A DNA stretch of 63,833 nt, counting the filler, from Guillardia theta CCMP2712 (taxonomy: Eukaryota; Protista; Cryptophyta): NCBI RefSeq assembly GCF_000315625.1. It is 5 parts of 5 records of this genome, joined end to end, with 100 filler letters (N's around TTAATTAATTAA, not from the genome) between each part and the next. Parts side by side here need not be neighbours in the genome. Positions count along the whole stretch, not along the records: positions 47,623 to 60,738 come from NW_005434305.1; 4 more parts are not named here. One strand, given 5' to 3'. This document shows, piece after piece, positions 4,533 through 58,296 of the stretch (the stretch's first letter is position 1; each line of letters begins with the position of its first letter). Position numbers and translations under genes: made by a program. The notes beneath the pieces are model-generated. The model was not told where the DNA came from. It was given only the letters and a program-made list of their open reading frames with translations, and did no database searches.

Positions 4533-7500
4533 ATGGCGGTTCGAAGTCGAGAGTCCAAGGAGACGATCCAGACGAGCTCTTCGACCCTGCGCATCCTCTA
4601 CTGGATTGTTCAAGTTCTCATCGCGCGAGTGAACCCGCTGCTCGACTCCTTCATCTTCCTCGCGCTCGCCTTCATCCTTTCCCTCGCTGGCCACACCTAC
4701 CAGGACGTGTACGGGACCAGGCAGCTCTTGAGCACCTTCCAGACAAGAATCATGGGGCGCTCGCAGCCCTCCTCCAGATGGAACAAGACGAGCGGGGTGA
4801 GGATGGAGGCGAGGAAGAGGAGCGAGGAGGAGGAGGAGGAGGAGGAGACGGGGTTGTGCTGACACCTGCTGGTGTAGTTTGTATTCTTCGACGACATCAC
4901 GCAGGAGGAGAACTTCTGGGATTACTTGGAGAATTATCTACCGGACGCTCTCTACCCTCCTGTCCCAGCTCTCGGCCCGCAGAGCATGAGTAAGACGGCA
5001 AGGAGGGGAGGAGCTGTAAACTCATTCTCGCTGCTCGCGCAGAAAGGCTCTACGACTTCAACGTGATAGTCCAGCGAGTTCGCATGCGGCAGAAGCGCGT
5101 GCTGCCGTCTCCCTGCGGTGACATCCCCCCACGCCTCGACTCCTCCGCCATGCCCGGCATCAAAGGTCAGAGTCGCTCCCTCCCGCCTCTTCTAAGCTTC
5201 AACGCAGGCAGCTTGTGCTACCCGCCTTACTCGCCAGGAGCGGAGGACAAGGGGGTGTGGCAGGGGGTGCAGTGGCAGTCAGCTTCTGCCCTGGGGCTCT
5301 CGTACAGGAACCCCTTGCAGTACAAGTACCAGGGGGGCAGCTTCGCCATCGAGATGCAGCAGAACTTCACGTCCTTCAAGCAGCAGGTGCGGACGCTGAG
5401 AGCCGCTCGCTGGACTGACGCGGGCACGCGCGTTGTGTTCATCGACCTGGTGGCTCTGAATCCCGCAGGAGATCAGTTTGTGTCTGCTCGCTACCAGTTC
5501 GACTTCGGAGTGTTCGGAGGAGTGAGCGCGAGCGTGCGACTCCGAGCCTTCCGAGATCGCTTCACTCATGCCTTCGTCATCGACGCCTTGAACATCGGGG
5601 CTGAGTCGATGCTGTACGCTGTCCTCTTCGTCAACATCTTCCGCGAGTTTGGCCGACTGAGAGCGTTCGGAGTGTGGCAGTACCTCGGGAACTTCTGGAA
5701 CTTGCTCGTCACCCTCTGTCTTGTCTTCCTCCTCGTCTCCATGACCTTTCGGGTCTTCGTCGTCCGTCCGGCATGGAACAACGCTGAGATGAGCGTGAGC
5801 TCGTGGCAGTGGGATGCCTTCGATCAGTTCAACCTCGTGTGGGACTGGGACCTGCTGGGAGAGAACGAGTCGTTCATTGTGAGGTTTCAAGCCCTCGCGC
5901 TCGTCACGGCATACATCAGAATCTTCGGGTTCATGCAGTTCTTTAGCAGAAAGCTCGACGACTTCATCACCTCCTTGTCTCATGCCAAGAGCAACTTGCT
6001 CGCCTTCCTGGTCATGATGACCATCCTGGTCATGACCTTCTCTGTTGGGTTCATGGTTGCCTTTGGGGATGAGAACGCCAACTTCTCCTCCTTTGCTGGC
6101 ACCTTGCTCTCCCTCTCGGAGATTCAGTTCGGGAATTGGAATCCGGCCTCCTTGTCCACCAAGACCTCTCTGCTCACGGCCTCGCTCATGCTCTCCTTCT
6201 ACTCCCTCCTGATGCTCCTCTCCGCCAGCGCCATCCTTGCGCTCATCAACTGGGCGACGCGCGAGGTGACTCACGGCAACGTGGAGCGAGAGACTGCCGA
6301 TGAGGAGGGAAACCTCAAGATTCAGATTCGCATCGGGCTGGCCCGTGTCCTCAACACCAGATTCTTCTCCTTCCTGTGCGGGCGGTCGTTGCTGATCCAC
6401 TACCTGCTGAGCTTCCAACACAAGAAGGCTCAGAGGATTGTAGGCGAAGAGACTGACGAGTGGGACGAGGAGCCCGTCCTCAACCGAGCCAAGAAGGCCT
6501 TCCGATCGCTCGTGCAAGAGACGCAGGACTTCAACGATGGGGTAGACAAGCTCTGCTCCTGCTTCGGCGTTGAGCACCTGGAGATCGCCAATCGCTGGCA
6601 GAAAGAGAACCTCTGGCGGAAGATCAGGAACGAGCAGCAGCAGCGAGTGTTCGAGCAGATGCTGGAAGGGCTGGTGGAGGGTCGAATCGATGCCGTGGTT
6701 CAGCAGTGCAAGCGATGGCGACAAGACTCGAGGGAGTCTGAGTCCAAGGGGAACCTGCACGAGCAGGACTGGAGGGACCAGGACGGGTTCTCCCTCCTCC
6801 ACGTGGCCTCCCTGCAGGGCAACCCAGACGCCGTCCTGAAGCTCCTCGACCTCGGCGCAGACCCCAACGCGAGGAACGACGAGGGCAACTCGTGTCTGCA
6901 CATCGCGGCGCTGAGCGGACAGCTGAACGCCTGTCGGGTGCTGACGGAAGGAGGAGCAGACTGCAACGTCGTCAACGCCAACTCTCTGACCCCCCTGCAC
7001 ATCGCAGCCTACGCGGGTCAAACTCCCGTGCTGAAGTTCCTCGTGGAAGAGTGCCGGGCTGACGCGAGCAAGGTGACGAGCGAGGGCCTCAGCGCCCTCC
7101 ACCTCGCGGTGCTGCAGGGCCACGCGAGTGCCTGCCGCCTGCTCGCGGAGTCATGCGACCTGCTCAACGTGCGGTCAAACGGAGGAGAGACTCCGCTGCA
7201 CTGCGCGGTGCTGAGCAGGCAGAACATCGAGATCGTGCGGATCCTCCTCAAGGCCGGGGCGAAGGTGGCGGGTAAGATGTACGACGGGAACAACGCGTAC
7301 CAGGCAGCTGTGGAGCATGAGAGCCCGCCAGCTATCCGACGGATGCTGCTCAAGGTGCTGCAGATGGGAGATGACTACCTGAGGGCGATGGGAAGCCTGG
7401 AAGAGAAGGCGGTGGGGATCAGCATGATCAAGTTCGTGGTGAGTGGAAGGACGAAGGAGCTCTTGGACCTGATCAACGAAGGTGCTGACGTGGACGCTGT

Positions 7501-8210
7501 CTTCCCGGGTTGGCTGCGCTCTGCATGCAGCGGTCGCCAACCGAAAGCTTGAGAGCATCTCGACCCTGGTGGAGAACGGGGCAGATCTAAACGTCAGGAA
7601 CGAGGAGGGAGACACGCCGATCCAGCTCGCGGTCCGCCTCGGCCTCTTCGAAGAGTTCCAGCTCATCGCGGACAAGATGACTCTTGACACGTTCCCGCTG
7701 GACGGCAAGGGTAACTCGCTGCTGCACATCGCCTCCAAGAGCTGCAGCAGCATGCAGATCGTCAAGTACCTCATCCGTCACTTCAAGATGGACCCTGCAT
7801 GGAGGAACTTCGAAGGAGCGTCGAGCGTAGATCTTGCCATACAGTCACTGGAGGAAGCAAAGCTCGGGGCCTCTCCTCCCCAGCGAGTCTCGGAGCTCCA
7901 GGCCTTGGTGGAGCATCTTGAGAAGGAGCACGAGGCGTTGGCGGGGGATCTCGTGACGGTGACGCTGCCTGGGCAAGCGGAGGAGGGGCAGGTGCGGGTC
8001 TACTCCAAGAAGATGGTGAAGTTCTTCGAGCGGATTGGGTTGACGAGCATGGCGATCTCATACGCGCAGAAGCTGGCGGAGAACGACGTGGACATGGAGG
8101 GGCTGGGGCTGGTGACGGACGTGCAGCTCAAGGAGCTGGGAATCAACAAGATCGGAGTGAGAAACAAGATCCTGCAAGGCATCCGCGACTGGAAGAAGTA
8201 CCCCGACTAG
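4533..8210 (+). CDS. Polycystin-2 (TRPP/PKD2)-like cation channel with C-terminal ankyrin repeats and SAM domain; apparent frameshift at ~7510
   Basis: VRMRQKRV, LRAARWTDAGTRVVFIDLVALNP and YLGNFWNLL are PKD-channel motifs, followed by the pore ANFSSFAGTLLSLSEIQFGNW. Multiple ankyrin repeats (GNSCLHIAA, TPLHIAAYAG, GETPLHCAV). C-terminal YAQKLAENDVDMEGLGLVTDVQLKELGINKIGVRNKIL is a SAM domain. Confidence 0.85.
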
Positions 8211-8324: not shown

Positions 8325-8340
8325 TTTACTCAAAGTTAAG
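8325..8340 (+). repeat. Dispersed TTTACTCAAAGTTAAG motif (short copy)
   Basis: Exact match to the first 16 nt of the copies at 8540, 26234, 50001 and 53391(rc). Confidence 0.9.
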
Positions 8341-11110: not shown

Positions 11111-13334
11111 ATGAAGATGTACTCTGGGCAAGATCTGGTCATGCCCAACAAGAGCATGAGGTCAGCTGTGAGGAGGACGAAGGCTGTCTTGTCTGCTGTT
11201 GTTGTCGGAGTAGCCATGACTGCTCTCATCACGTTGCTCTACTCCTCCGCGAAGGTGGGTCGGTACCTCTCCTCCGGCTCTTCTGACACTCAACAGGATG
11301 GTCTCTCGCAGAGCTTCATGCTCGACGAGACCTCGACAGACGCGTCAGGGAACGAGGTTTGAGCTCCATCCTTGCGCAGCAAGATCCTTTTACCGAGATG
11401 TGTGAGCAGGCTGCACCTGCCACCCAGGTGGTTGAGAAGGGCCGAGGACAAGGAGGGATGTGGGATGTGCCCCTCCCTCCCGTCGAGAAGAAGATTCTGC
11501 AGCCTCAGTTCGCTGCCAAGTATGGAGAAGCTGCTGCTGCTGCCTCTCAGAGGATGTTCAACCCTGTAAGCCAACCCTCCCCCTGCTCACTGTTCGCTTC
11601 CCCGTATTGATCCATGTGCAGGTCGCTACTGATAAGAATGGCGATCGGGTTTCGGAAGCAGATGCTCGGTCCATCAAGGCGCGATATGGTCTAGTGGTAC
11701 CTGGGAGCGAGGTAGATGACGTGTAACCGCTGTCACACACACTGACATGAGGTTGCAAGGATGTGTTCCACGACACCAAGAGCGAGGGCGACGCAACGGC
11801 TGAACCCAAGGTCTACACCGCAGAAGAGAGCGATGCTCAGACTGTAGAAGCCCCAACCTGGTTCTCTTCGTCCTCCTTCTTCCCCGTCAGTTCGGTCAGT
11901 TTGCAGCAACGAAATGCATTGCGAGTAATCGTGACCAAGCAGAAGGCTCCCCGATTCGTTGCTGTTCCTTCGCCGCTTCGGGTTGTTCCGCAGACCGTCG
12001 GTACATGCAGAGCTGTTTGTGAAGAGCTGTCGATGAGAGAGCACAGGTGTAGAGGGAGCCCAGATGCAGCCTGTGGCCATCAGGCAGCAGAGGATCGCAT
12101 ACCCTCAGTTCAACTACCAGACTTCCAGCAGCTTCTCCTCCCCACGTTTGCTTCCTGTGTCCTACTCCGGCCCGGTGGTCATGACGAAGCCTTACGGACC
12201 CGTGGTACGTCTCTTCTCTCGCTTGCTCTTCTCATGCAGAACCAGGTGGCAAGAGCTATCCCCAACCCCATGTCGTCGGTCTACAGATTTTCCTCCACCG
12301 GCCCGGCCTATGGAGTTTCCGCTCTTCCTTCTGGCGAGGGGCCCGTGGCTGTCCGTGGCATCAACGGGGTCGGTTCAGAATTCTACGTGGGCAACGGGCA
12401 GGTGAGAGCGCGACGGCTAGTGGTGGCAGTCAGTCAGTCACCCGCTGCAGGTTCGAGGGATAGGGCTCTATGGGGCCAGCGGCATCGCGAGTGGTCGAGG
12501 AGTCAACGCAGCTAAGGTATGAAGAAGCTTCAGCTGCTTGTGCTCACAGGGTGCAGGGACAAGCTGATGGGAAGCGACTCAACGTAGGTTCCGGGGAGGA
12601 AGCTGGTTTTGGACTGAGTGGCCAGGTGAAGGAGGTGGCAGATGCAGCTGCCTGATCTGATGTCACGATGGCAGGCGGGTACAGCAGCTGGGGATGGAAT
12701 CGTGGTGGAGGAAGGCATTGCTCAGGGAAGGGACATCACTGTTCGGCAAGGGACAGTGGCAGGCCAGGTGAGAAGAGGAGAAGAAGTGGGGAAATGCTCC
12801 TGATCCTCTTACAGGGCATCCTCATTGGCGACGACGGCACGGGGCATGGTGAGTTCATCGGATCGGGTAAGCGACTGAGACGAGGAGGACGAGGAGGCTG
12901 AGACTCTCAAAGGGACCGGGTCGGGGCGAGACCTCTCAGTGAGCAAGGGAACGGCTGTTGGCGCAGGAATCAGCGTGGCGGAAGGACAAGCGAGTGGTCA
13001 GACCCTGAGCGCGTGGTGGGTGAGATGTGTGACGTTGCGACAGGGAAAGGCATCACAGTGAACGATGGCGAGCTGCAAGGAAGAGACTTGAGCGCGAGGA
13101 AGGGGAGGTGAAGGAGGACTGGGAACCTTGTGCGACCTGACGAGGGTTGACAGCGGAGAGGGAATAGGCATCTCTGTGGACCATGGTACTGCTGAGGGAG
13201 TCGGAGTCAAGGTGGAGCAGGTGAGTTTGGAGGGAGAGAGAGCGCAGTGGTCAGTCTGCTGACTCAAGATTCAGGGGACGATCGCTGGGAATGGGATTTA
13301 CGTGCAGCACGGACAACTTGCACGATCTGTGTGA
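11111..13334 (+). CDS. Multi-exon membrane-anchored hypothetical protein with a C-terminal 12-residue Gly-rich repeat (G-x-x-x-G-x-[GD]-I-x-V-x-x)
   Basis: N-terminal TM segment AVLSAVVVGVAMTALITLLY. Spliced exons at 12330-13334 read GTAAGDGIVVEE GIAQGRDITVRQ GTVAGQGILIGDD ... GTAVGAGISVAE GQASGKGITVND ... GTAEGVGVKVEQ GTIAGNGIYVQH, stop TGA 13332-13334. That all exons belong to one gene is inferred. Confidence 0.6.
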
Positions 13335-47622: not shown

Positions 47623-49738
47623 ACCGCTCCCCGGCCTTGATCGTGTTGTCGCGGTTGTCGGCCGTCATGCTCGCCAGCGCCCTGCATGCTGCCTCCTGTA
47701 CCCCCGCGTGCTCCCCGTGCCTCTCCATCGCCCCGACGGCCGCCCCTACTGCCCCTGCCTCCCCGGCCTTGATCGTGTTGTCGCGGTTGTCGGCCGTCAT
47801 GCTCGCCAGCGCCCTGCATGCTGCCTCCTGTACCCCCGCGTGCTCCCCGTGCCTCTCCATCGCCCCGACGGCCGCCCCTACTGCCCCTGCCTCCCCGGCC
47901 TTGATCGTGTTGTCGCGGTTGTCGGCCGTCATGCTCGCCAGCGCCCTGCATGCTGCCTCCTGTACCCCCGCGTGCTCCCCGTGCCTCTCCATCGCCCCGA
48001 CGGCCGCCCCTACTGCCCCTGCCTCCCCGGCCTTGATCGTGTTGTCGCGGTTGTCGGCCGTCATGCTCGCCAGCGCCCTGCATGCTGCCTCCTGTATCTC
48101 TTGGTCCTCAACATTGTTCTCCATTGCCCCGACGGCCGCCCCTACTGCCCCTGCCTCCCCGGCCTCGATCGTGTTGTCGCGGTTGTCGGCCGTCATGCTC
48201 GCCAGCGCCCTGCATGCTGCCTCCTGTACCCCCGCGTGCTCCCCGTGCGCTGTCATCCCCATTACTACTGCCTGCAGTGCTCTCACGTTTTTTGCTCTCT
48301 GCTGGTTTGGTGTGTTACCATTCGTCAGGCTTCTCAGTAGTTCGTTTCCTTTCTTCTGTATCCCAGCATACTTCGGATGCCTCTCCATCCCTCTCACTAC
48401 CGCCTTCATCCCTCCTGATCTTCCCACTTTGATCTGGTACTTCGCATCGCTTGCAATGATGCTTTTCAGCGCTCCAAATCCTGCCTCCTGTACCCTGACA
48501 TCGTCCTTTCCTATCTTCATCTCGTGGATCACCGTGTCTATCCTTCCATCAATGTCTTCCTCCGACAGATTCGTCACGTTCTCCCCAAGCCTCCTAATGC
48601 TGACGTGCCCCTCCTCATCTGTCCCTTGTTCCCTCCTTTGCTTCTTCTCTTCCTGCCTCCCCGGCTGTTCCTCCCTCACACTCCCAAGAACTATCGCCAG
48701 CTCGGAGAACCGCGGTCGCTCCATGTCGCTCGCCCTCCAGCAGCTCTCCACCATACCCCACAGCCCTTCCTCGCATCCTCCTTCTATCTCCTCTTCTCTC
48801 AGTCTCCCTCCCCCGCACACGTACACGATCACCTGCTCGTCCTCCGTCATCTGGTAGTAGGGGATCTTGCCTGACGTCAGGAGCTCCCAGCACGTGACCC
48901 CGAAGCTCCACACGTCGCTCTTCTCCGAGTACCGTCCTCTCTGCAGTGACTCTGGCGGCATGTACCGCACTGGCCTTGCTTGTCCTGCCGCTACCGTAGC
49001 GTGAGTGCAGTTGGCGAGCTCCTCTGCCAGCCCGTAGTCCGTCACCTTCACCGAGGTCTTCCGCACGTCCTCCTCGTCGAAGCCGAAGAGCAGCACGTTC
49101 CTCGCCGCCAGGTCCCGGTGCACGACCCCGTTCTCTGCCAGATGCTCCATGCCCTGCGCAATCTGCTGCATCATCACCACCTGATGCTCTCTTGTCAGCT
49201 GTCCTTCCAGCCTTTCAAACGCGTCGCTGAGCGATCCGTGCTCGGCAAACTCCGCCAGCAGCATCCGGCAGTCCTCCTCCTGGGTCTGCCCCATGTACCG
49301 CANNNNNNNNNNNNNNNNNNNNNNNNNNNNNNNNNNNNNNNNNNNNNNNNNNNNNNNNNNNNNNNNNNNNNNNNNNNNNNNNNNNNNNNNNNNNNNNNNN
49401 NNNNNNNNNNNNNNNNNNNNNNNNNNNNNNNNNNNNNNNNNNNNNNNNNNNNNNNNNNNNNNNNNNNNNNNNNNNNNNNNNNNNNNNNNNNNNNNNNNNN
49501 NNNNNNNNNNNNNNNNNNNNNNNNNNNCTTGGATGGCGTTGCGAAGAGCGAGGTTGGGAACGAGGTCCCTGCGGGGGAGGCGGGAGCCGGTGAGGGGGCT
49601 TGTGCGATGCTGCTGGAGCCAGGTCTCGATGAAGGATCTCTCGTACGTGTGGCCGTCGCAGGTGTTGACAGGGTCGGACATCAACTCCATGCTGATGGGG
49701 CAGAAGAAGGAGGGAAGCGCTTGCTGCTGCTCTGCCAT
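47623..49738 (-). CDS. U-box + tyrosine-kinase-type domain + ARM repeat protein (3' end in gap)
   Basis: U-box FFCPISMELMSDPVNTCDGHTYERSFIETWL...LVPNLALRNAI; kinase VVHRDLAARNVLL, DYGLA, RPVRYMPPE, SDVWSFGVTCWELL; 44-aa ARM repeats. Confidence 0.9.
47631..48250. repeat. 132-bp near-identical tandem repeats encoding 44-aa ARM units
   Basis: Unit starts at 47631 and 47763 and continues at the same period. Confidence 0.95.
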
Positions 49739-50000
49739 GGCGCCGGGTGGAGTGAGGGGACAAATGCTTTTTGGGGGGTATATTTCTTTTTTTGAGACTG
49801 TCATATGTAAGCTTGAAATATGAGAGAAATACTTTCGGGGTCTTCAAATAAAAATATCATACACCAACTTGTACTCCCAAGGCGATACAATGAAGTATTG
49901 AAAGTTACCCCATCTGGGGGGTACAGGGTATCGAAAAAAAGGTCAAGGGGTATTGCCCAAAATAGCACGTGGGCAATGGAGGGTTCTCTCAGTTTAAAAA

Positions 50001-50098
50001 TTTACTCAAAGTTAAGTTAAAAAGCAGTCGAGGAGGCTTGACCCTCTTATCTATAGGCGCACCCTGGTGGAATTTATGTATACCCTTTTTTGAGTAAA
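50001..50098. mobile_element. 98-bp MITE-like unit with 10-bp terminal inverted repeats (TTTACTCAAA...TTTGAGTAAA)
   Basis: TIRs at 50001-50010 and 50089-50098; the interior is a deleted version of the 26234 copy. Confidence 0.6.
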
Positions 50099-50746
50099 GT
50101 TTTACTCAAGTTTCCTATTTGAGAATTTTTCTAAGTGTAGCGCGATGGCGGGATGTGACAGGTTGATGCTCGCTTTCTCAAGTATATGGACTAAACAGTC
50201 AAGAAATATGCTTGCATATTTGATAATTATGAGTATGTTAATCATTTGGCACCTTATTAGACATTGCTTAAGATCGAAATGTACAGCATTCTTCCTGAGA
50301 AGGCATGTATCATAAGTGATGAAGGGAAGTCGTAGAGAGACAAATGCATGGATAGAGTGCGCAAGTGAGTGAGGGAAGAAGGGACGGATGAAGGGACTGG
50401 GAAAGCGAGATGGCAGGGAGAGATAGAGAGTGGGTGGCTGGAACGGAGGTCATGAAATCAAGCATATTGCAACTTGGTTATATCAAACTGAATGTACTTG
50501 CAGGGAGTGGCCGACGGTGCCTGCCTCAATGCGATTGGGATCAGCCTTGTAGATTGGGATCAGCCTTCCTGTGGCCCTCGAACTTGTTTCAAACACGTGA
50601 CAATGTGATTCACTCTTATTACATTCATCAGTTAACTTAGGTCTCGGATCTCACAGCCTTCCTGCGTTTCAGGCTGATGGCCATCGAACTTGTTTCCAAA
50701 GTTCAAACACGTGACAATGTGATTCACTCTTATCACATTCATTAAC

Positions 50747-52939
50747 TTAGGTCTCGGATCTCACAGCCTTCCGGCGTTTCTTGTTGCCTCTCAGCACACG
50801 TACTACTGTCATCCAACACAGCTGCGAAAATCTTGACATGTCACCATTCGTCTCTGTCTTAGTCACCTTCTCATATTCCTCGAAAAGATAATTTTCGCAT
50901 TGATCAAACATGAAACCTGCCTCAATGCGATTGGGATCAGCCTTGTAGATGTCAAGAGCTTCAGCCTCTTCCTTGATGCGTTTCGACAGATATTTCATAT
51001 CAGAATGCCTCTTTCCGTCATATTTGGTGGGAAAGTCAATCCCTCTAAGGCGCTTGAAAGGACCTTTTCGAGTTTCCGCATGTCCGAAGTGATACAACAT
51101 GTAGGCGCATCTCGTGGTCATCTTTGCCCAAGGGAATGTACCTTTCTGCGGCTTCCTGGTCGCATTCCGTGAACGACGTGCATTACTTACATCCTGTCCC
51201 TGTAATGAACCCAATCCATCGTTCTCCTCATCACGATTTACCAGCCTGCGCACCCCACTGTCCTCGGTTCTGGTAATGATGGTATCCAGTTTGTCACTTA
51301 CACTCACAAACATGTCATAGACACTTCGGCCCGGCACCCTCTCTCCTTGCTGAACGCTAGTGGTAGAACCGCCGGTCACTGATGTGACGGTGCCATCGCC
51401 GTCACCCCCGACGTCGTGACAACGCTGGCATGGCATTCTTGACTGTTCTTCCTGTTTCCGAATCATGCCTTTCATTTCAGCCATTTCGCCTTTGATTTCT
51501 CCCACTTCGCTTTTGATTTCTCCCATTTCTTTCAACAGGCATGTATGCGATGTTATCCCCGTCGCAACTCTTCCGTGCGCCTCAGTTGTAACGAATTTCT
51601 TCAACGTATCTATGAATCCCTCGTGAATAAACAATTCCGTTTGAAACAGAGGATGGTTCATGGGCATTGTATCACGAAGAAATTTTTCGTGGTAGATGAC
51701 AGACGCCAGAGATTGTTCAACAAGCCTCCTAAGCCGTGCATTTCCCTGAATGCATGGATATAATTGGTCCATGATCTCATTAATCTCTCGCCGTGTTTCA
51801 CTGGTCTCACACCAGAACATAGGCGGTAGAGCCGCGAATTCAGGTTTGTCTGTGGGTAACCCACAACATGTTCTTCCTACCTAGTGGGGGTTCAATTGAA
51901 GTCAAATATTGGCCGCAGTATTTTCAACTTACTTGCTGGTCTCCAGCGGCCTCGTATCTGAGATACGTGTCATGTATCGTACCCATTTTCCAACCAGCTC
52001 GCAGAGAAATCGCACTTATGCTTGGTCCGCTGGTAGTTCCTGACGAAGTATATGTCGCTGATCCTTTTCTGATACTATGTGTGCCTGTATGGAGCATCAA
52101 ATCAAGTTGTGAATGACTACGGTGTAATGAGCCCTATTCACCTAAGTCTCCGACGTGCAAACCGTTATTCTCAAGAGCTTAACAGGTACATCGTAAAGAT
52201 GCACGATGTACATTAACGATGATCGGTACGAACTACATGTCGAGAAGGCAAGATCTGGTTTTTCTCTCAACAGAAATGAGATCCAGTGCATGAAATGCTC
52301 TGCTTTGAATCTTACGAAGTCGATGGGAATAATATCCTTCTGGGACAGAATATGTTCTAAGTAATGGGCTGTCGGTAAGCCATTGGGTGTTTTTCGGCCC
52401 TCTGCCGCCTCCAAGTCTTGCAGAAAGGCTGGGGTAATCAGACCATATGTTCGCTGGTTTGCAAATAACCATTCAAGAAACCTAGTCATGTGCTGACGAT
52501 ACATTGTACGTATACTGTCAGCCAGATTATTGTTCAAAATGTCTTCAGTGTCTCGACGTAATTGTTCTATTTCTGAGATCGGCAGTTGCAGCATTTCTAG
52601 CGTGGGACGCCGACGCCGCGGCTGTGACAGTGCTGACCGCTGAGACAGTCCGGGAGACGAGTCACTGGCTACCGAGACTGCGATTGCCGGGACTGCAACT
52701 CGGACTTCCTGGCTTGCCATAGCGGCAGCGGCACTGCGCGCAGCATTGGTGATGATGGAACACTGCGATTGTCCACACCTTCCTGTCTGCTCAAAGTCCT
52801 CCGTGCTACCCACACAGATTGCATGGAAAGCACGTTTACACTGACTACACTCTTCTAGAGGACACACTCCAAGGTGCTCAGGAAGTACCTTGCATCCCTC
52901 AGCAAATAAGCACAATGATTGCGCAGGCCCCCGATCCAT
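50747..52939 (-). pseudogene. Crypton (CryptonS-like) tyrosine recombinase with an N-terminal PHD-like Cys/His finger; frameshifting internal deletion at ~52180
   Basis: Spliced reading: ...GDLG|THSIRKGSATYTSSGTTSGPSISAISLRAGWKMGTIHDTYLRYEAAGDQQ|VGRTCCGLPTDKPEFAALPPMF, with introns at 52141-52085 and 51932-51881. Core-binding-like SIRTMYRQHMTRFLEWL and STCSSYRSSLMY lie upstream. The region that should carry the first catalytic Arg and the Lys is absent. Confidence 0.85.
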
Positions 52940-53350
52940 TGTTGCGGCCCCAACTTTGTACCGAAGAGTTTAGCGGAAATAGCCAGGATGATTAGAGATG
53001 TATCCTGAGGCGGAGAGGTAGTTGTACTGTTAATAATGAATAAGTAATACTTGATTCCAACTTTTTTGAATCTTCGATATCAGATAGGCCTAGCAGCATA
53101 CGATTTTGGTCATATCTATATACCATACTACAAACGTATTTTCCACCTTTCGTGAAGTCTGTACCTACCCCAATGATTGCGTTGGAATTTACAATCTCAT
53201 CGCCCTCCATCACAAGCATCATCGTCCTCATACCCCTCATCATCACCCTCACATACCGTTTCATCACCCTCATGAAATTCCAGCATCGAGTAAAAAACCT
53301 AGTAGTATTATTCCAACAGGGTTCAGGAAATTTTAACTTAACTTCTCTCC

Positions 53351-53391
53351 TGATTGTCCTCGTACTGATTTTTAACTTAACTTTGAGTAAA
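53351..53391 (-). repeat. Dispersed 41-bp motif, reverse orientation; partial copies at 53331-53344 and 53431-53442
   Basis: Exact reverse complement of 8540-8580. Confidence 0.9.
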
Positions 53392-53658
53392 GAGTCCCAA
53401 GTCACAGAGGAAGCTGTAATGTTTGTTTGTACTTTGAGTAAAAGTTTGTGATACGAGTCGGCCTCCGACACCTTGAAGACGCGAGATCGGATCGTGCCAC
53501 GGGCCCGCCGCGCCACTACCGTACGCCGGTACCGTACGGTGATCACTCAGCGGCCCTGCCGGCCCGGCCGGTGAACGAGTCGGATCCGGTGCCCGAACTT
53601 CCCGAAGCTGTCCTAGTCCGTTGAACCCAAGGGATTTTTGTTCATCACTCTGATCACC

Positions 53659-53695
53659 ATGATCAAGAGCAAGGAGGCTGAGGAGCAGAAGCAGC

Positions 53696-53786
<91 letters not shown>

Positions 53787-55890
53787 TGAACGAGAAGAAC
53801 ATAGATATAAATATGACGAGAAGAAAGAGGAGCAGGAGCGAGGGAAGCGGTTGAAGGATTCAATCGTCTGGCCTAGCTTCAACAAAGAAAACTTTCATAA
53901 CACACAAGACAAGAATCTACGAGGCCTGCAGCAGGCGTTGAATGCATCACTCCAGCAGATCAGGAGGAGTGCTCTTCAAGAAATTGAGACCATCAAGAGA
54001 GCGTTCATGAGAGAAAAAGCAAGCACAGTGATGCGCTTGGGAAGAAGGAGAAGAGCTAAATTCTGGGCTGCGGGACTTCATGAATCAAGTCCCTTGACAG
54101 ATATAGAAGATAGCTTTCGAGAGCACAAGCAGCAGAGTCAGAAGAGTCTCTTCATAAAGAAGAAGAAGTACTTGTTGCAGGAGCTGGAGAGGAGAATGGA
54201 GAGAGAGGAAGAGAGGGATTTCAAGCACATGCTGTCACAACTTGATCAAGAAGAACGAATAGAAGATGAACGCTTAAGGCAAGACCACAAGGTGGAATCT
54301 CGATTGCTGTCCCGGGATATCTTTCGCCACTACGAATTCATGTACAGGGAGAACATGCTGGATTGTGGCTTCAACAAGGACGTGTTGCTCATGTTCAGTC
54401 TCAAGTATATGGACGCCGAAAAGGCGATCAGGCTGCGGGAAGATTTCAACTTGGAGAGAAAAGTGAAGATGCGAGATGCGCATCTGAACCTCGGAACACA
54501 TCAGAGCTCAGAGTTGAGCCAGCTAGAGCAAGCGCGGCTGAAGAAGAAGCGGCTTGCGGTGGAAGACAGGTTGAGGCTATGGGACCTCAAGAAGAAGTCC
54601 GCAAGGCTGAACCTCGAATCTCGATTGAAGGAGGAGCAAAGGAATGCTGAATCTTCACTGGCGCAACAGAAACTCTCTGAATTGACTTCAGGGTCGGTGG
54701 CGACACCGCCGACAGTCAAGGTGCAGACTGTTCCAGAACTCCCGGAGAGTCGAGCGTCAGTGCAGCTCCTTGCAAAGACAGTCGGAGGTCAGTCGAACCT
54801 GTCGAGGCTTCCAGCAAAGTTGCAGTTGTCCAAAGTGTCCTTTGTGCGTGAGGAAGCTGTGATTAGGGATTTTGAACAGCAAATCCAGAGGCTGATAGAG
54901 ACAACGAGAAAGGAGATGCAAGCGAAGTTCGAGGAGTCCAACGACAGGTTCTTGCGATTTTGTAAAGCAGCATGGCAGAAGCTCGTGGAGAGAAGAAAGC
55001 ACTACCGGAGATTCCGTGACCTCTCAATGAAGGCAGTGGAGAGGGCGAAGATGACCATTATGTTCGACGAGCCAACGAGAGCGAGGATGAAGCAACTTGT
55101 TCAAGTGATGCCTGCTCCTACAACCAAGGCTGGTGCTGGACATGCCGCTCAGTCCATCCCACATCTCAGGATGCAAGAGGAGCAAGGAGGAGGGTGGGGG
55201 GCGAGGGATTTTTCCTGCAGTGCCATTCACTCCTGGGCGAGGAGCTCGACCTCGTGGCTGCGGGCAGATGCCAAGAACGAGCCCCCAGCTCGTGCGGTGC
55301 TGGGGGTAGGTGATGTGGTCAGAGCACACTGCCGGGTGAAGGGAAAGAGGAGCAGCAAGACGGAGAGAGCGCAGGTGGTGGAGGGAGGAGGGAGAGACGG
55401 TCTTGTGACGTTGCACTTCGACGGGGATGTAGTGCAGCGAGTGCCGGAGGGGTGGGTCGTCCTCGTGGTGCCAAGGGGAGAAGAGGCCCTCCCGAAAGCA
55501 ACGCGGAAGAGAATTTTAGTTGGCTACGTGGCGGTCCTGGAGGAGGAGCTGTCTGTAGAGGAGGGAGAGCTGGTCACCGTGCTGGGAGATAAAGACGCTC
55601 CAGCTGGATGGCTGCTGGTGGAGAGGGAAGGGGGAAGTCCCGTAAGAACCAGAGGGCTGATCCCAGAGGGCTGCATTGACTCGACCTTCCTCCCTTTGGA
55701 CAATCCCACGTTCAAGCTGCGGATGGTTGAGGAGAGAAGCGAAGGGTCCAAGATGATGGAGCGAGGAGAACAACGATTCGAGGATAAAGGGAGTGCCGGA
55801 GGAGAGAATCCGGACGGCGTAAAGTCGTCGCCCTTCCTATGGTCCAACACTCACTTCCAACGGCCCAGCCATCTTGTCAGCCCTCTGTGA
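53659..55890 (+). CDS. Intronless coiled-coil protein with C-terminal Tudor-like and SH3 domains
   Basis: Long charged helical region; LGVGDVVRAH...AQVV...VTLHFDGD (Tudor-like); GYVAVLEEELSVEEGELVTVL...GWLLVE...GLIPEGCI (SH3); (QE)n tract from a GAGCAG repeat. Confidence 0.7.
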
Positions 55891-57998: not shown

Positions 57999-58296
57999 GG
58001 CCAGGTTTCGTTTCTCTCGCCATGCCACTTGCCTCGAGCCGAGATGGACTGGACTATCATAATGCACATGAAGTGCAGATGCTGCCGATGCTCCTCCTCC
58101 TCCTCCTCCTCCTCCTCCTCCTCCTCCTCCTCCTCCTCCTCCTCCTCCTCCTCCTCCTCCTCCTCCTCCCGATGCCCCTCCTCCTGTGGCCCGCCCTCCT
58201 GCTCTCCCATCCTCCTGCATTGTTCGCAAAACTACCCCTCCTTTTTAAATTTTGAGTACCCCACCCCCTGGCATCCCCGTGAAGCACTCCCTGCCC

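What the first reader, a model, noticed from the sequence alone, without database searches (positions are those of the whole stretch)
50001..53391. Crypton-type tyrosine recombinase gene bracketed by inverted copies of a genome-dispersed end motif: a candidate TIR-bearing YR transposon family
Seen: a spliced YR gene (DLG|THSIRKG...RAGW...DTYLRYEAAGDQQ|VGR..GLP...FAALPP) lies between 50001-50023 and its exact inverted copy at 53369-53391. The same motif recurs without the gene at 8325, 8540, 26234, 43220 and 53431. Established: these protein motifs match Crypton-type YR transposons of oomycetes and diatoms, which are generally described as lacking long TIRs and TSDs. Inference: the motif may be the recombinase-recognised end of this family, and the solo copies may be non-autonomous derivatives. 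No TSD is visible at the flanks, which is consistent with YR chemistry.
Basis: partly seen in the sequence, partly recalled or inferred. Interest (0 to 1): 0.8.

Follow-up and report, generated by a model that had tools for sequence, protein, structure and literature searches.

The report
Broken Crypton between two abundant repeats
A damaged copy of a Crypton-type (tyrosine-recombinase) jumping gene in the alga Guillardia theta lies exactly between two inverted copies of a very abundant short repeat, but other copies of the gene lack that bracket, so the inverted repeats are not the ends of the family.

Summary
50001-50023 and 53369-53391 are exact inverted copies (28 nt with one mismatch). 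Between them, on the minus strand, lies a spliced tyrosine-recombinase (YR) gene.

The piece is Guillardia theta nuclear DNA. The gene belongs to the oomycete/diatom "CryptonS" family: conserved R-K-HxxR-W-Y, a Cre-like fold and a shared C-terminal region. This copy is dead. About 640 bp (175 codons, including Arg-I and Lys) are deleted at 52178/52179, with a frameshift.

- Five ends of other Crypton copies were examined, four in the G. theta assembly and one in a near-identical metagenome contig. Each stops at or near the inner edge of the repeats (50046, about 53340), and none carries the motif.
- The motif is a separate short repeat, conserved over 23-40 nt. It appears in roughly 1,000-2,000 sequence contexts, mostly as solo, intergenic copies.
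- No target-site duplication (TSD) flanks the pair.

There is one real link. Two diverged G. theta Crypton families carry a conserved palindrome near the 3' end, built from TTTACTCAA. That 9-mer is also the outer end of the abundant repeat, whose 23-mer matches the family-2 palindrome at 19 of 23 positions.

Best reading: a Crypton integrated between an inverted pair of these repeats, possibly guided by the shared motif.

The parts
50001..50045 (+). Left copy of the abundant short repeat. The outer 23 nt form the inverted-repeat arm. The inner part (GCAG plus an 18-nt segment) is a short variant of the longer unit seen in L010.
   Evidence: L002 and L011 lose homology to the window at 50046-50053, so this segment is not part of the Crypton.
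53345..53391 (-). Right copy of the abundant short repeat, in inverted orientation. It has a sharp outer end at ...GAGTAAA.
   Evidence: One search shows summed depth about 1,400-2,000 times the flanks, with loose ends at 53345/53359 (inner side) and 53391-53394 (outer side). One search aligns the units.
50046..53344 (-). CryptonS-type element (G. theta family 'F1'), an internally deleted copy of 3.3 kb. The intact form would be about 3.9 kb.
   Evidence: Boundaries come from other copies: L002, L011-A and L011-B for the 3' end, L010 for the 5' end. Interior depth is about 3-8 times the flanks.
52179..52939 (-). First coding part. The start codon is at 52937-52939. It encodes a Cys/His-rich N-terminus and the core-binding (SAM-like) domain, up to the deletion junction.
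   Evidence: Over the 109 residues that align (41% of the query), it is 100% identical to P0002, a G. theta transcript product that UniRef names 'Core-binding (CB) domain-containing protein'.
52178..52179 (.). Deletion junction. P0002 residues 110-284 are missing here, including the Arg-I and Lys motifs, together with two small introns (about 640 bp). The frame shifts and a stop follows at 52142-52144.
   Evidence: tblastn of P0002 against the window and L001. Contigs of X1 and X6 break at 52178/52179, and X6 has a loose end there.
52085..52141 (-). Intron of 57 nt with GT..AG ends.
   Evidence: X6 joint 52083>52141; sequence read.
51933..52084 (-). Exon encoding HxxR (HSIRKG), Trp (RAGW) and the nucleophile Tyr (YLRY).
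   Evidence: The same columns are conserved in 30 homologues.
51881..51932 (-). Intron of 52 nt, starting GTAAGT and ending AG.
   Evidence: X6 joint 51877>51930; sequence read.
50747..51880 (-). Last exon, encoding the conserved CryptonS C-terminal region (377 aa) and the stop codon.
   Evidence: 664 cluster representatives match it. No solved fold matches; the Atlas matches are diatom and oomycete relatives.
50090..50110 (.). Palindrome near the 3' end, TTGAGTAAA-gt-TTTACTCAA, 44 nt from the Crypton's 3' end. It is conserved in both G. theta Crypton families.
   Evidence: None of 2,000 dinucleotide shuffles gave two exact 9-mers.
53328..53344 (-). Last bases at the Crypton's 5' edge. They contain AGTTAAGTTAAAA, identical to 13 nt of the inner part of the inverted repeat. 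This may be the Crypton's own 5' end or a partial extra repeat unit.
   Evidence: Read. The alignment to L010 is ambiguous here.
53431..53445 (-). Partial copy of the motif (about 13 nt) outside the pair.

Best explanation
A CryptonS-type tyrosine-recombinase transposon of Guillardia theta occupies 50046-53344. It is now dead because of a 640-bp internal deletion.

It lies between two inverted copies of a separate, very abundant short repeat. The 23-28-nt 'TIRs' belong to that repeat, not to the Crypton. The most likely history is that the Crypton integrated into the middle of a pre-existing inverted pair of the repeat, a foldback of about 90 nt.

Both G. theta Crypton families carry a conserved palindrome near the 3' end made of the repeat's terminal 9-mer. 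The recombinase, or its C-terminal region, probably binds that motif, and this may have steered integration to a site that offers two copies of it.

Shown: the inverted pair, the YR family and fold, the deletion, the element's own ends in other copies, the abundance of the repeat, and the shared 9-mer.

Inferred: the order of events, binding of the motif by the recombinase, and targeting.
For: Inverted pair: exact.

Family: the profile of 30 full-length homologues hits Phytophthora, Aphanomyces, Lagenidium, Nitzschia and Hanusia proteins, and some carry Peptidase_C48. R199, K214, H299, R302, W328 and Y337 are conserved. The AlphaFold model has pLDDT 83, and its 50 best PDB matches are Cre, Flp, XerH and the Tn1549 integrase, plus two rows for yeast Ndc10.

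Deletion.

Ends of other copies without the motif: L002, L011 A and B, L010, L012 and L013.

The repeat: summed depth about 1,400-2,000 times the flanks; 1,637 and 982 contigs laid; some contigs join an inverted pair within 40 nt or less (joints 50022-50046 > 53360-53369). The units in L010, L011, L012 and L014 are solo and intergenic, and only 23-40 nt are conserved.

Shared motif: all 13 exact hits of the 9-mer in about 103 kb of G. theta DNA lie either in repeat units or in Crypton 3' palindromes. The last 85 nt or so of families F1 and F2 can be aligned. The 23-mer matches the F2 palindrome at 19 of 23 positions, which occurred in 0 of 2,000 shuffles.
Against: No empty-site allele or identical pre-insertion foldback was seen, so the order of events is inferred.

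Close inverted pairs of the repeat look rare: a handful of contigs out of about 1,500. A purely random hit on one would be very unlikely, so some targeting or another mechanistic link must be assumed.

The two arms are not symmetrical beyond about 35 nt.

No TSD flanks the pair, so the way the repeat itself moves is unknown.

The 5' end of a young F1 copy other than this one could not be recovered. L001 is cut by an LTR retrotransposon at the position matching window 53148, so the 5' boundary rests on one older paralogue (L010).

L001-L003 come from metagenome assemblies and are taken to be G. theta copies only because they are 90-98% identical.
Confidence: 0.55

Rival explanations
1. The abundant repeat units are non-autonomous modules that depend on the Crypton recombinase. 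They carry its binding palindrome and are moved or recombined in trans. The window copy would then be a recombinant in which two such modules cap a Crypton and could act as its ends.
For: The 9-mer and palindromic layout are shared between the unit and the conserved 3' region of two diverged Crypton families. No TSD is present, as expected for YR chemistry. Units occur as tandem direct pairs and as close inverted pairs. The junctions of the units with the Crypton are flush on both sides.
Against: Only 23-40 nt are shared, not the subterminal hundreds of bases seen in the one described non-autonomous Crypton (PMC3212892). Five other Crypton ends lack units. No evidence was obtained that units move, such as insertion polymorphism. 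In the Cryptons the palindrome lies 36-44 nt inside the end, whereas in the unit it is at the very end.
Confidence: 0.2
2. The repeat is the TIR of an ordinary cut-and-paste (DDE) transposon or MITE family. The TIR-Crypton-TIR unit is a composite that its transposase could move in trans, comparable to MarCry-1_FO.
For: The inverted repeats are exact, copy number is high, and some MITE-like pairs of 70-100 nt appear in read joints. There is a precedent for a Crypton inside Mariner TIRs (PMC3212892).
Against: No TSD flanks the pair. No DDE gene lies inside the pair. The units in the fetched loci are solo, not paired. No transposase was found next to any unit; the 1,054-aa ORF beside the L010 unit has no Pfam hit. 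This reading does not explain the 9-mer shared with the Crypton palindromes.
Confidence: 0.15
3. One reading: the inverted repeats are the native ends of a TIR-bearing Crypton family, recognised by its recombinase, and other copies have simply lost them.
For: The pair is exact and flush with the element, no TSD is present, and this copy is young (100% identical to the transcript product P0002 over the parts they share: residues 1-109 and 285-298).
Against: Three independent 3' ends (L002, L011-A, L011-B) stop within 7 nt of 50046, and one 5' end (L010) stops within about 10 nt of 53344. None has the motif. Independent losses at the same base are very unlikely. The second family also has no TIRs. 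Beyond about 45 nt the repeat family continues with sequence not found in the Crypton.
Confidence: 0.07
4. Pure coincidence: two unrelated insertions of the abundant repeat happened to land at the two edges of the Crypton.
For: The repeat is very abundant and intergenic.
Against: Two independent insertions flush with both ends, in inverted orientation and facing outwards, at about one unit per 40 kb, are extremely improbable.
Confidence: 0.03

Closest known systems
CryptonS elements of oomycetes and diatoms (Kojima & Jurka 2011, PMC3212892)
   Same: A single YR gene with the catalytic residues and a conserved C-terminal region with no known domain. Homologues occur in Phytophthora, Aphanomyces and diatoms, and some are linked to a C48 peptidase. 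Copy number is low, there are no TIRs at the element's own ends, and internally deleted derivatives exist.
   Different: The host is a cryptophyte. The termini are not the usual TATGG (F1 ends ...CTATAGATAAG, F2 ends ...TTTCTAT). A conserved palindrome lies near the 3' end. This copy sits inside an inverted pair of another repeat.
MarCry-1_FO of Fusarium oxysporum (a Crypton inside Mariner TIRs; PMC3212892)
   Same: A Crypton YR gene lies between the inverted repeats of another kind of element.
   Different: MarCry also carries a Mariner DDE transposase and has TA TSDs. Here there is no transposase gene and no demonstrable TSD, and the repeat shares a motif with the Crypton itself.
Starship elements of fungi (DUF3435 'captain' YR; some have TIRs)
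   Same: YR-mobilised DNA elements that can have terminal inverted repeats.
   Different: Starships are tens to hundreds of kb and carry cargo. Their YR is of the DUF3435 type, which Pfam did not detect here. They are restricted to fungi.
MITE families and their solo or foldback copies
   Same: A short repeat of very high copy number, intergenic, with a sharp terminal sequence and occasional pairs of 70-100 nt.
   Different: Most copies seen here are solo. Only 23-40 nt are conserved. No TSD and no autonomous partner were found.

Membership tests
CryptonS (tyrosine-recombinase DNA transposon) | YR catalytic residues R, K, HxxR, H/W and Y | tested here: met
   Conserved in 30 homologues (R199, K214, H299, R302, W328, Y337 of P0015). 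The window copy keeps HxxR, W and Y but has lost R and K through the deletion. The intact G. theta transcript product P0002 has them.
CryptonS (tyrosine-recombinase DNA transposon) | Two-domain YR fold (core-binding plus catalytic domain) | tested here: met
   The model of P0015 has pLDDT 83. The top PDB matches are Cre, Flp, XerH and the Tn1549 integrase, with probability up to 1.0 and TM by target up to 0.63. Sequence methods alone were weak.
CryptonS (tyrosine-recombinase DNA transposon) | Conserved C-terminal region shared with the oomycete and diatom elements; occasional C48 peptidase | tested here: met
   664 cluster representatives match the 377-aa C-terminal part. Named hits are Phytophthora, Aphanomyces, Lagenidium and Nitzschia, and one carries PF02902. 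Repbase consensus sequences could not be compared directly.
CryptonS (tyrosine-recombinase DNA transposon) | No reverse transcriptase or other transposase (that is, not DIRS, Ngaro or Tec) | tested here: met
   No such ORF or Pfam hit lies between 50001 and 53391.
CryptonS (tyrosine-recombinase DNA transposon) | No TIRs at the element's own ends | tested here: met
   Five ends of other copies, and both ends of family F2, carry no inverted repeat.
CryptonS (tyrosine-recombinase DNA transposon) | Terminal direct repeats of 4-6 bp (often TATGG) | tested here: inconclusive
   Only a possible 4-nt AGAG at the two junctions of the window copy, and TAT-type bases at the F2 ends. The L010 5' edge has TATATGG. 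None of this is beyond chance.
CryptonS (tyrosine-recombinase DNA transposon) | Evidence of mobility: dispersed copies, deletion derivatives | tested here: met
   Copies lie on five scaffolds of GCA_000315625.1 (L010-L014). Interior depth is about 3-8 times the flanks. Deletion derivatives are the window copy and L012. Insertion polymorphism was not tested.
TIR (DDE) DNA transposon or MITE, for the bracketing repeat | Terminal inverted repeats | tested here: met
TIR (DDE) DNA transposon or MITE, for the bracketing repeat | Target-site duplication of fixed length | tested here: not met
   No direct repeat lies at the outer edges (left ...TTTAAAAA, right GAGTCCC...). A TA duplication cannot be told apart from the palindromic TTTA...TAAA ends.
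TIR (DDE) DNA transposon or MITE, for the bracketing repeat | An autonomous partner that encodes a DDE transposase and has the same TIRs | tested here: inconclusive
   None was found in the roughly 103 kb of G. theta DNA available or beside any unit. The whole genome could not be searched.
MarCry-type composite | DDE transposase gene together with the YR gene inside the TIRs | tested here: not met
   Only the YR gene is present.
Starship | DUF3435 captain YR and a large cargo-bearing element | tested here: not met
   No DUF3435 hit. The element is 3.3-3.9 kb.

The most novel reading that the evidence does not exclude
The short repeat, present in roughly 1,000-2,000 contexts, is a miniature element, or 'solo site', that carries the binding palindrome of the G. 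theta Crypton recombinases and is spread or recombined by them. Pairs of such sites can cap a Crypton and serve as its ends. This would be the first high-copy, MITE-like family driven by a eukaryotic tyrosine-recombinase transposon. It would also show how a YR element can acquire TIRs.
Probability: 0.2. Interest if true: 0.75.

Novelty: new member of a known kind. Interest (0 to 1): 0.4.

Why it matters
Cryptons are poorly understood, low-copy elements, and their cis-acting sites have not been defined.

Two diverged Crypton families in one alga share a 20-nt palindrome 36-44 nt from their 3' ends. The same 9-mer forms the tip of the most abundant short repeat seen in the reads laid on this stretch. 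This gives a concrete, testable candidate for the recombinase's binding site. It also raises the question of whether a YR transposon can drive a high-copy miniature family.

The specific claim of a TIR-bearing Crypton family does not hold. That matters for annotation: TIR-based classifiers would misfile this locus.

Tried and rejected
- Pfam on the window's three coding pieces, and on ten homologues, gave no YR hit. Scanning 30 homologues gave only weak SAM-like hits.
- A profile search of PDB sequences gave nothing relevant. The fold search was needed.
- A metagenome scan with a 20-mer of the repeat gave one contig, L004. It has a solo 25-nt match in AT-rich DNA of unknown origin and may be chance.
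- A viral scan with a 17-mer gave four chance-level hits that do not extend.
- Rfam found nothing in 49900-53600.
- I tested whether the GC-rich DNA beyond L002's end matches the GC-rich right flank of the window, as a possible longer TIR. It does not.
- I tested whether the 1,054-aa intronless ORF beside the L010 unit is a transposase. It has no Pfam hit and no flanking inverted repeat.
- Contigs L005-L009, carrying a distant homologue, showed no TIRs. They look like one locus sampled in several samples, so they are uninformative.
- P0015's contig could not be fetched.
- The C-terminal region has no solved-fold match.
- I considered an introner reading of the repeat and dropped it. All five units seen are intergenic, and the splice-like bases are non-canonical.
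Full report
WHAT IS THERE

The 23-mer TTTACTCAAAGTTAAGTTAAAAA occurs at 50001-50023 (+) and 53369-53391 (-) with no mismatch, and nowhere else in the window at up to three mismatches. None of 100 shuffles gave a match. The arms extend to 28 nt with one mismatch, and with one indel to about 35 nt.

The 3.39 kb between the arms has lower G+C (about 0.38-0.54) than most of the flanking DNA. It lies in the short spacer between two divergently transcribed host genes: a U-box/kinase/ARM-repeat gene to the left and an SH3-domain gene to the right.

THE GENE AND ITS FAMILY

The minus strand carries a spliced gene. The first coding part runs from the start codon at 52937-52939. Intron 52085-52141 follows, then the exon 51933-52084, then intron 51881-51932, then the last exon down to the stop at 50747.

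Both introns have GT..AG ends, and both are spliced out in contigs of run X6.

The first part is 100% identical, over the 109 residues that align (41% of the query), to P0002, a Guillardia theta transcript product that UniRef names 'Core-binding (CB) domain-containing protein'. The piece is therefore G. theta nuclear DNA, and paralogues were later fetched from assembly GCA_000315625.1.

The 377-aa C-terminal part matches 664 cluster representatives; full-length relatives are 680-750 aa. A profile of 30 full-length relatives finds proteins of Phytophthora species, Aphanomyces, Lagenidium, the diatom Nitzschia, Phaeothamnion and the cryptophyte Hanusia. One of them is fused to a C48 peptidase domain. 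That is the host range, the conserved C-terminal region and the peptidase association that Kojima & Jurka (PMC3212892) describe for CryptonS.

The alignment keeps R199, K214, H299, R302, W328 and Y337. Sequence methods barely see the recombinase. An AlphaFold model (pLDDT 83) does better: its 50 best PDB matches are Cre, Flp, XerH and the Tn1549 integrase, apart from two rows for yeast Ndc10.

The C-terminal region has no solved-fold match. In the ESM Atlas it finds only diatom and oomycete relatives.

THIS COPY IS BROKEN

P0002 aligns to the window over residues 1-109 (52504-52178) and 285-298 (52178-52137). Residues 110-284 are absent. They include the Arg-I motif (WNLMSRSSN) and the Lys motif (HQKNDQ).

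In L001 the same stretch is present, with two introns of about 50 nt each, so roughly 640 bp are deleted. The junction shifts the frame into a stop at 52142-52144. Contigs of X1 and X6 break at 52178/52179, which shows that the transcripts come from an intact paralogue.

The window copy is therefore non-autonomous.

WHERE THE ELEMENT'S OWN ENDS ARE

- L002 is a 98% identical copy. It matches the window down to 50046 and then continues into unrelated GC-rich DNA without the motif.
- In L011 (scaffold JH992983) a 97% identical copy ends at the position matching window 50053. It abuts, tail to tail, an older copy whose 3' end matches 50047. No motif lies between them.
- In L010 (JH992977, GUITHDRAFT_151100) an older paralogue is homologous up to about window 53335-53340. 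Unrelated DNA follows.
- A second family (F2; L012, L013 and L014; about 35-40% protein identity to F1) has clear ends, 5'-GTATCTGTAATATA ... ATTCTTTCTAT-3'. It has no inverted repeats and no motif at the ends.
- L001's copy is cut at the position matching window 53148 by a Ty3-type LTR retrotransposon, so it says nothing about the 5' end.

The Crypton proper is therefore 50046 to about 53344. The 45-47-nt units outside it are not part of the family.

WHAT THE MOTIF IS

Logan contigs of two DNA runs were laid on 49600-54600. The bin holding the right unit has summed depth 128,742 against about 60-80 in the flanks (run X1), and 7,890 against 5.7 (run X2). In all, 1,637 and 982 contigs were laid. 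The interior of the element is only about 3-8 times the flanks. Summed contig depth is not a copy number, but the order of magnitude is a thousand or more contexts.

Loose ends pile up at 53391-53394, which marks a sharp outer end, and at 53345/53359, where this locus departs from the family. Some contigs join a left-type arm to a right-type arm within 40 nt or less. These are foldbacks of 70-100 nt, and they are few. Other contigs show direct tandem units.

The units found in the fetched G. theta loci (L010 14332, L011 7695, L012 6410, L014 14908) are solo and intergenic. They are alike only over the outer 23-40 nt.

No TSD flanks the window pair. No transposase was found near any unit.

A REAL LINK BETWEEN MOTIF AND CRYPTON

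In about 103 kb of G. theta DNA, all 13 exact occurrences of TTTACTCAA or its complement fall into two classes: repeat units, and a palindrome near the 3' end of Crypton copies.

- F1 has TTGAGTAAA-nn-TTTACTCAA, 44 nt from its end (window 50090-50110; also in L002, L011-A and L011-B).
- F2 has TTTACTCAA-ct-TTAAGTAAA, about 36 nt from its end (L012, L013).

The last 85 nt or so of F1 and F2 can be aligned, although the rest of their non-coding DNA cannot.

The repeat's 23-mer is identical to the F2 palindrome at 19 of 23 positions. None of 2,000 dinucleotide shuffles of F2 gave such a match, and none of 2,000 shuffles of F1 gave two exact 9-mers.

The 13 nt at the window Crypton's 5' edge (AGTTAAGTTAAAA) also repeat the inner half of the 23-mer. 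It is unclear whether they belong to the Crypton or are a partial extra unit.

EXPLANATION

The best-supported reading has three parts.
- The inverted repeats belong to the abundant repeat.
- A Crypton, later deleted internally, integrated between an inverted pair of units.
- The shared palindrome reflects one DNA-binding specificity, which may have steered the integration.

The first part is well supported. The order of events and the targeting are inferred.

A random hit on one of the rare foldbacks would be very unlikely. That keeps alive the more novel reading, in which the units are recombinase-dependent modules. The DDE-composite reading lacks a TSD and a transposase.

COMPARISON AND NOVELTY

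Cryptons are described as lacking TIRs and having 4-6-bp terminal direct repeats (PMC3212892, PMC13465315). The G. theta elements fit that description at their own ends. The direct repeats could not be established here: only a 4-nt AGAG is present at the two junctions.

The closest precedent for a Crypton inside foreign TIRs is MarCry-1_FO, which differs in carrying a Mariner transposase and TA TSDs.

The locus is best filed as a new member (cryptophyte host) of a known kind, sitting in an unusual nested position. The conserved 3' palindrome and its match to a high-copy repeat are the part worth following up.

LIMITS

- The whole G. theta genome could not be searched.
- Only one reads call was allowed, and it used contigs, not raw DNA reads.
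- L001-L003 are metagenome contigs, assigned to G. theta copies by identity only.
- Repbase could not be consulted.

Noticed in passing
L011:10228-13363: Two F1-type Crypton copies sit tail to tail, with their 3' ends meeting at 11208/11209 (...GCGCCTAT|TTATCTATAGG...). Together they form a large imperfect palindrome. This may be a footprint of recombination at or near the element's 3' end.
   Followed up: partly
L012:9390-11650 compared with L013:8028-12009: The second G. theta Crypton family (F2) has a full copy of about 3.98 kb (L013) and a derivative with a 1.7-kb internal deletion (L012). This is a second case of a non-autonomous Crypton in this genome.
   Followed up: partly
L001:1-5802: A Ty3/chromovirus-type LTR retrotransposon (RT, RNase H, integrase, chromodomain; LTR 5705-5791 matches 1-89) is inserted into an F1 Crypton copy at the position matching window 53148. 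An inverted LTR fragment lies at 7428-7513.
   Followed up: partly
window 50520-50554 / 50916-50950 and 50588-50670 / 50702-80: There are internal duplications in the 3' untranslated part of the Crypton: a 35-nt exact repeat 396 nt apart, and a segment of about 80 nt repeated 110-114 nt apart at 97-98% identity.
   Followed up: no
window 47627-48418: A 132-bp tandem repeat (five or more copies, the first ones identical) encodes repeated 44-residue ARM-like units at the C-terminal end of the neighbouring U-box/kinase gene.
   Followed up: no
window about 49300-49520: A run of N, probably an assembly gap, lies inside the neighbouring U-box/kinase gene and shows as X in every frame.
   Followed up: no
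L004:987-1009: A JGI metagenome contig (Ga0065711_1027012, 55.7 kb, AT-rich, origin unknown) holds a solo 25-nt exact match to the repeat's outer end. It could be chance or a relative's copy.
   Followed up: partly
L010:11291-13778: Three annotated genes of 126 aa each lie about 1 kb apart on alternating strands, just downstream of the old Crypton paralogue. They have no Pfam hit and look like another repeat family.
   Followed up: no
window 50750-51880 (residues 9-103 of the C-terminal part): The first 100 residues or so after the catalytic Tyr match (TM 0.57 over 91 residues) an oomycete ESM Atlas cluster in which 12% of members carry the NDC10_II domain. Yeast Ndc10 also appears among the fold matches of the recombinase part.
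   Followed up: no
window 53673-53796 and 58082-58165: Long GAGCAG and CTC microsatellites encode poly(EQ) and poly(E)-type tracts in the neighbouring genes. They account for the longest 'inverted repeats' that the repeat finder reported.
   Followed up: no
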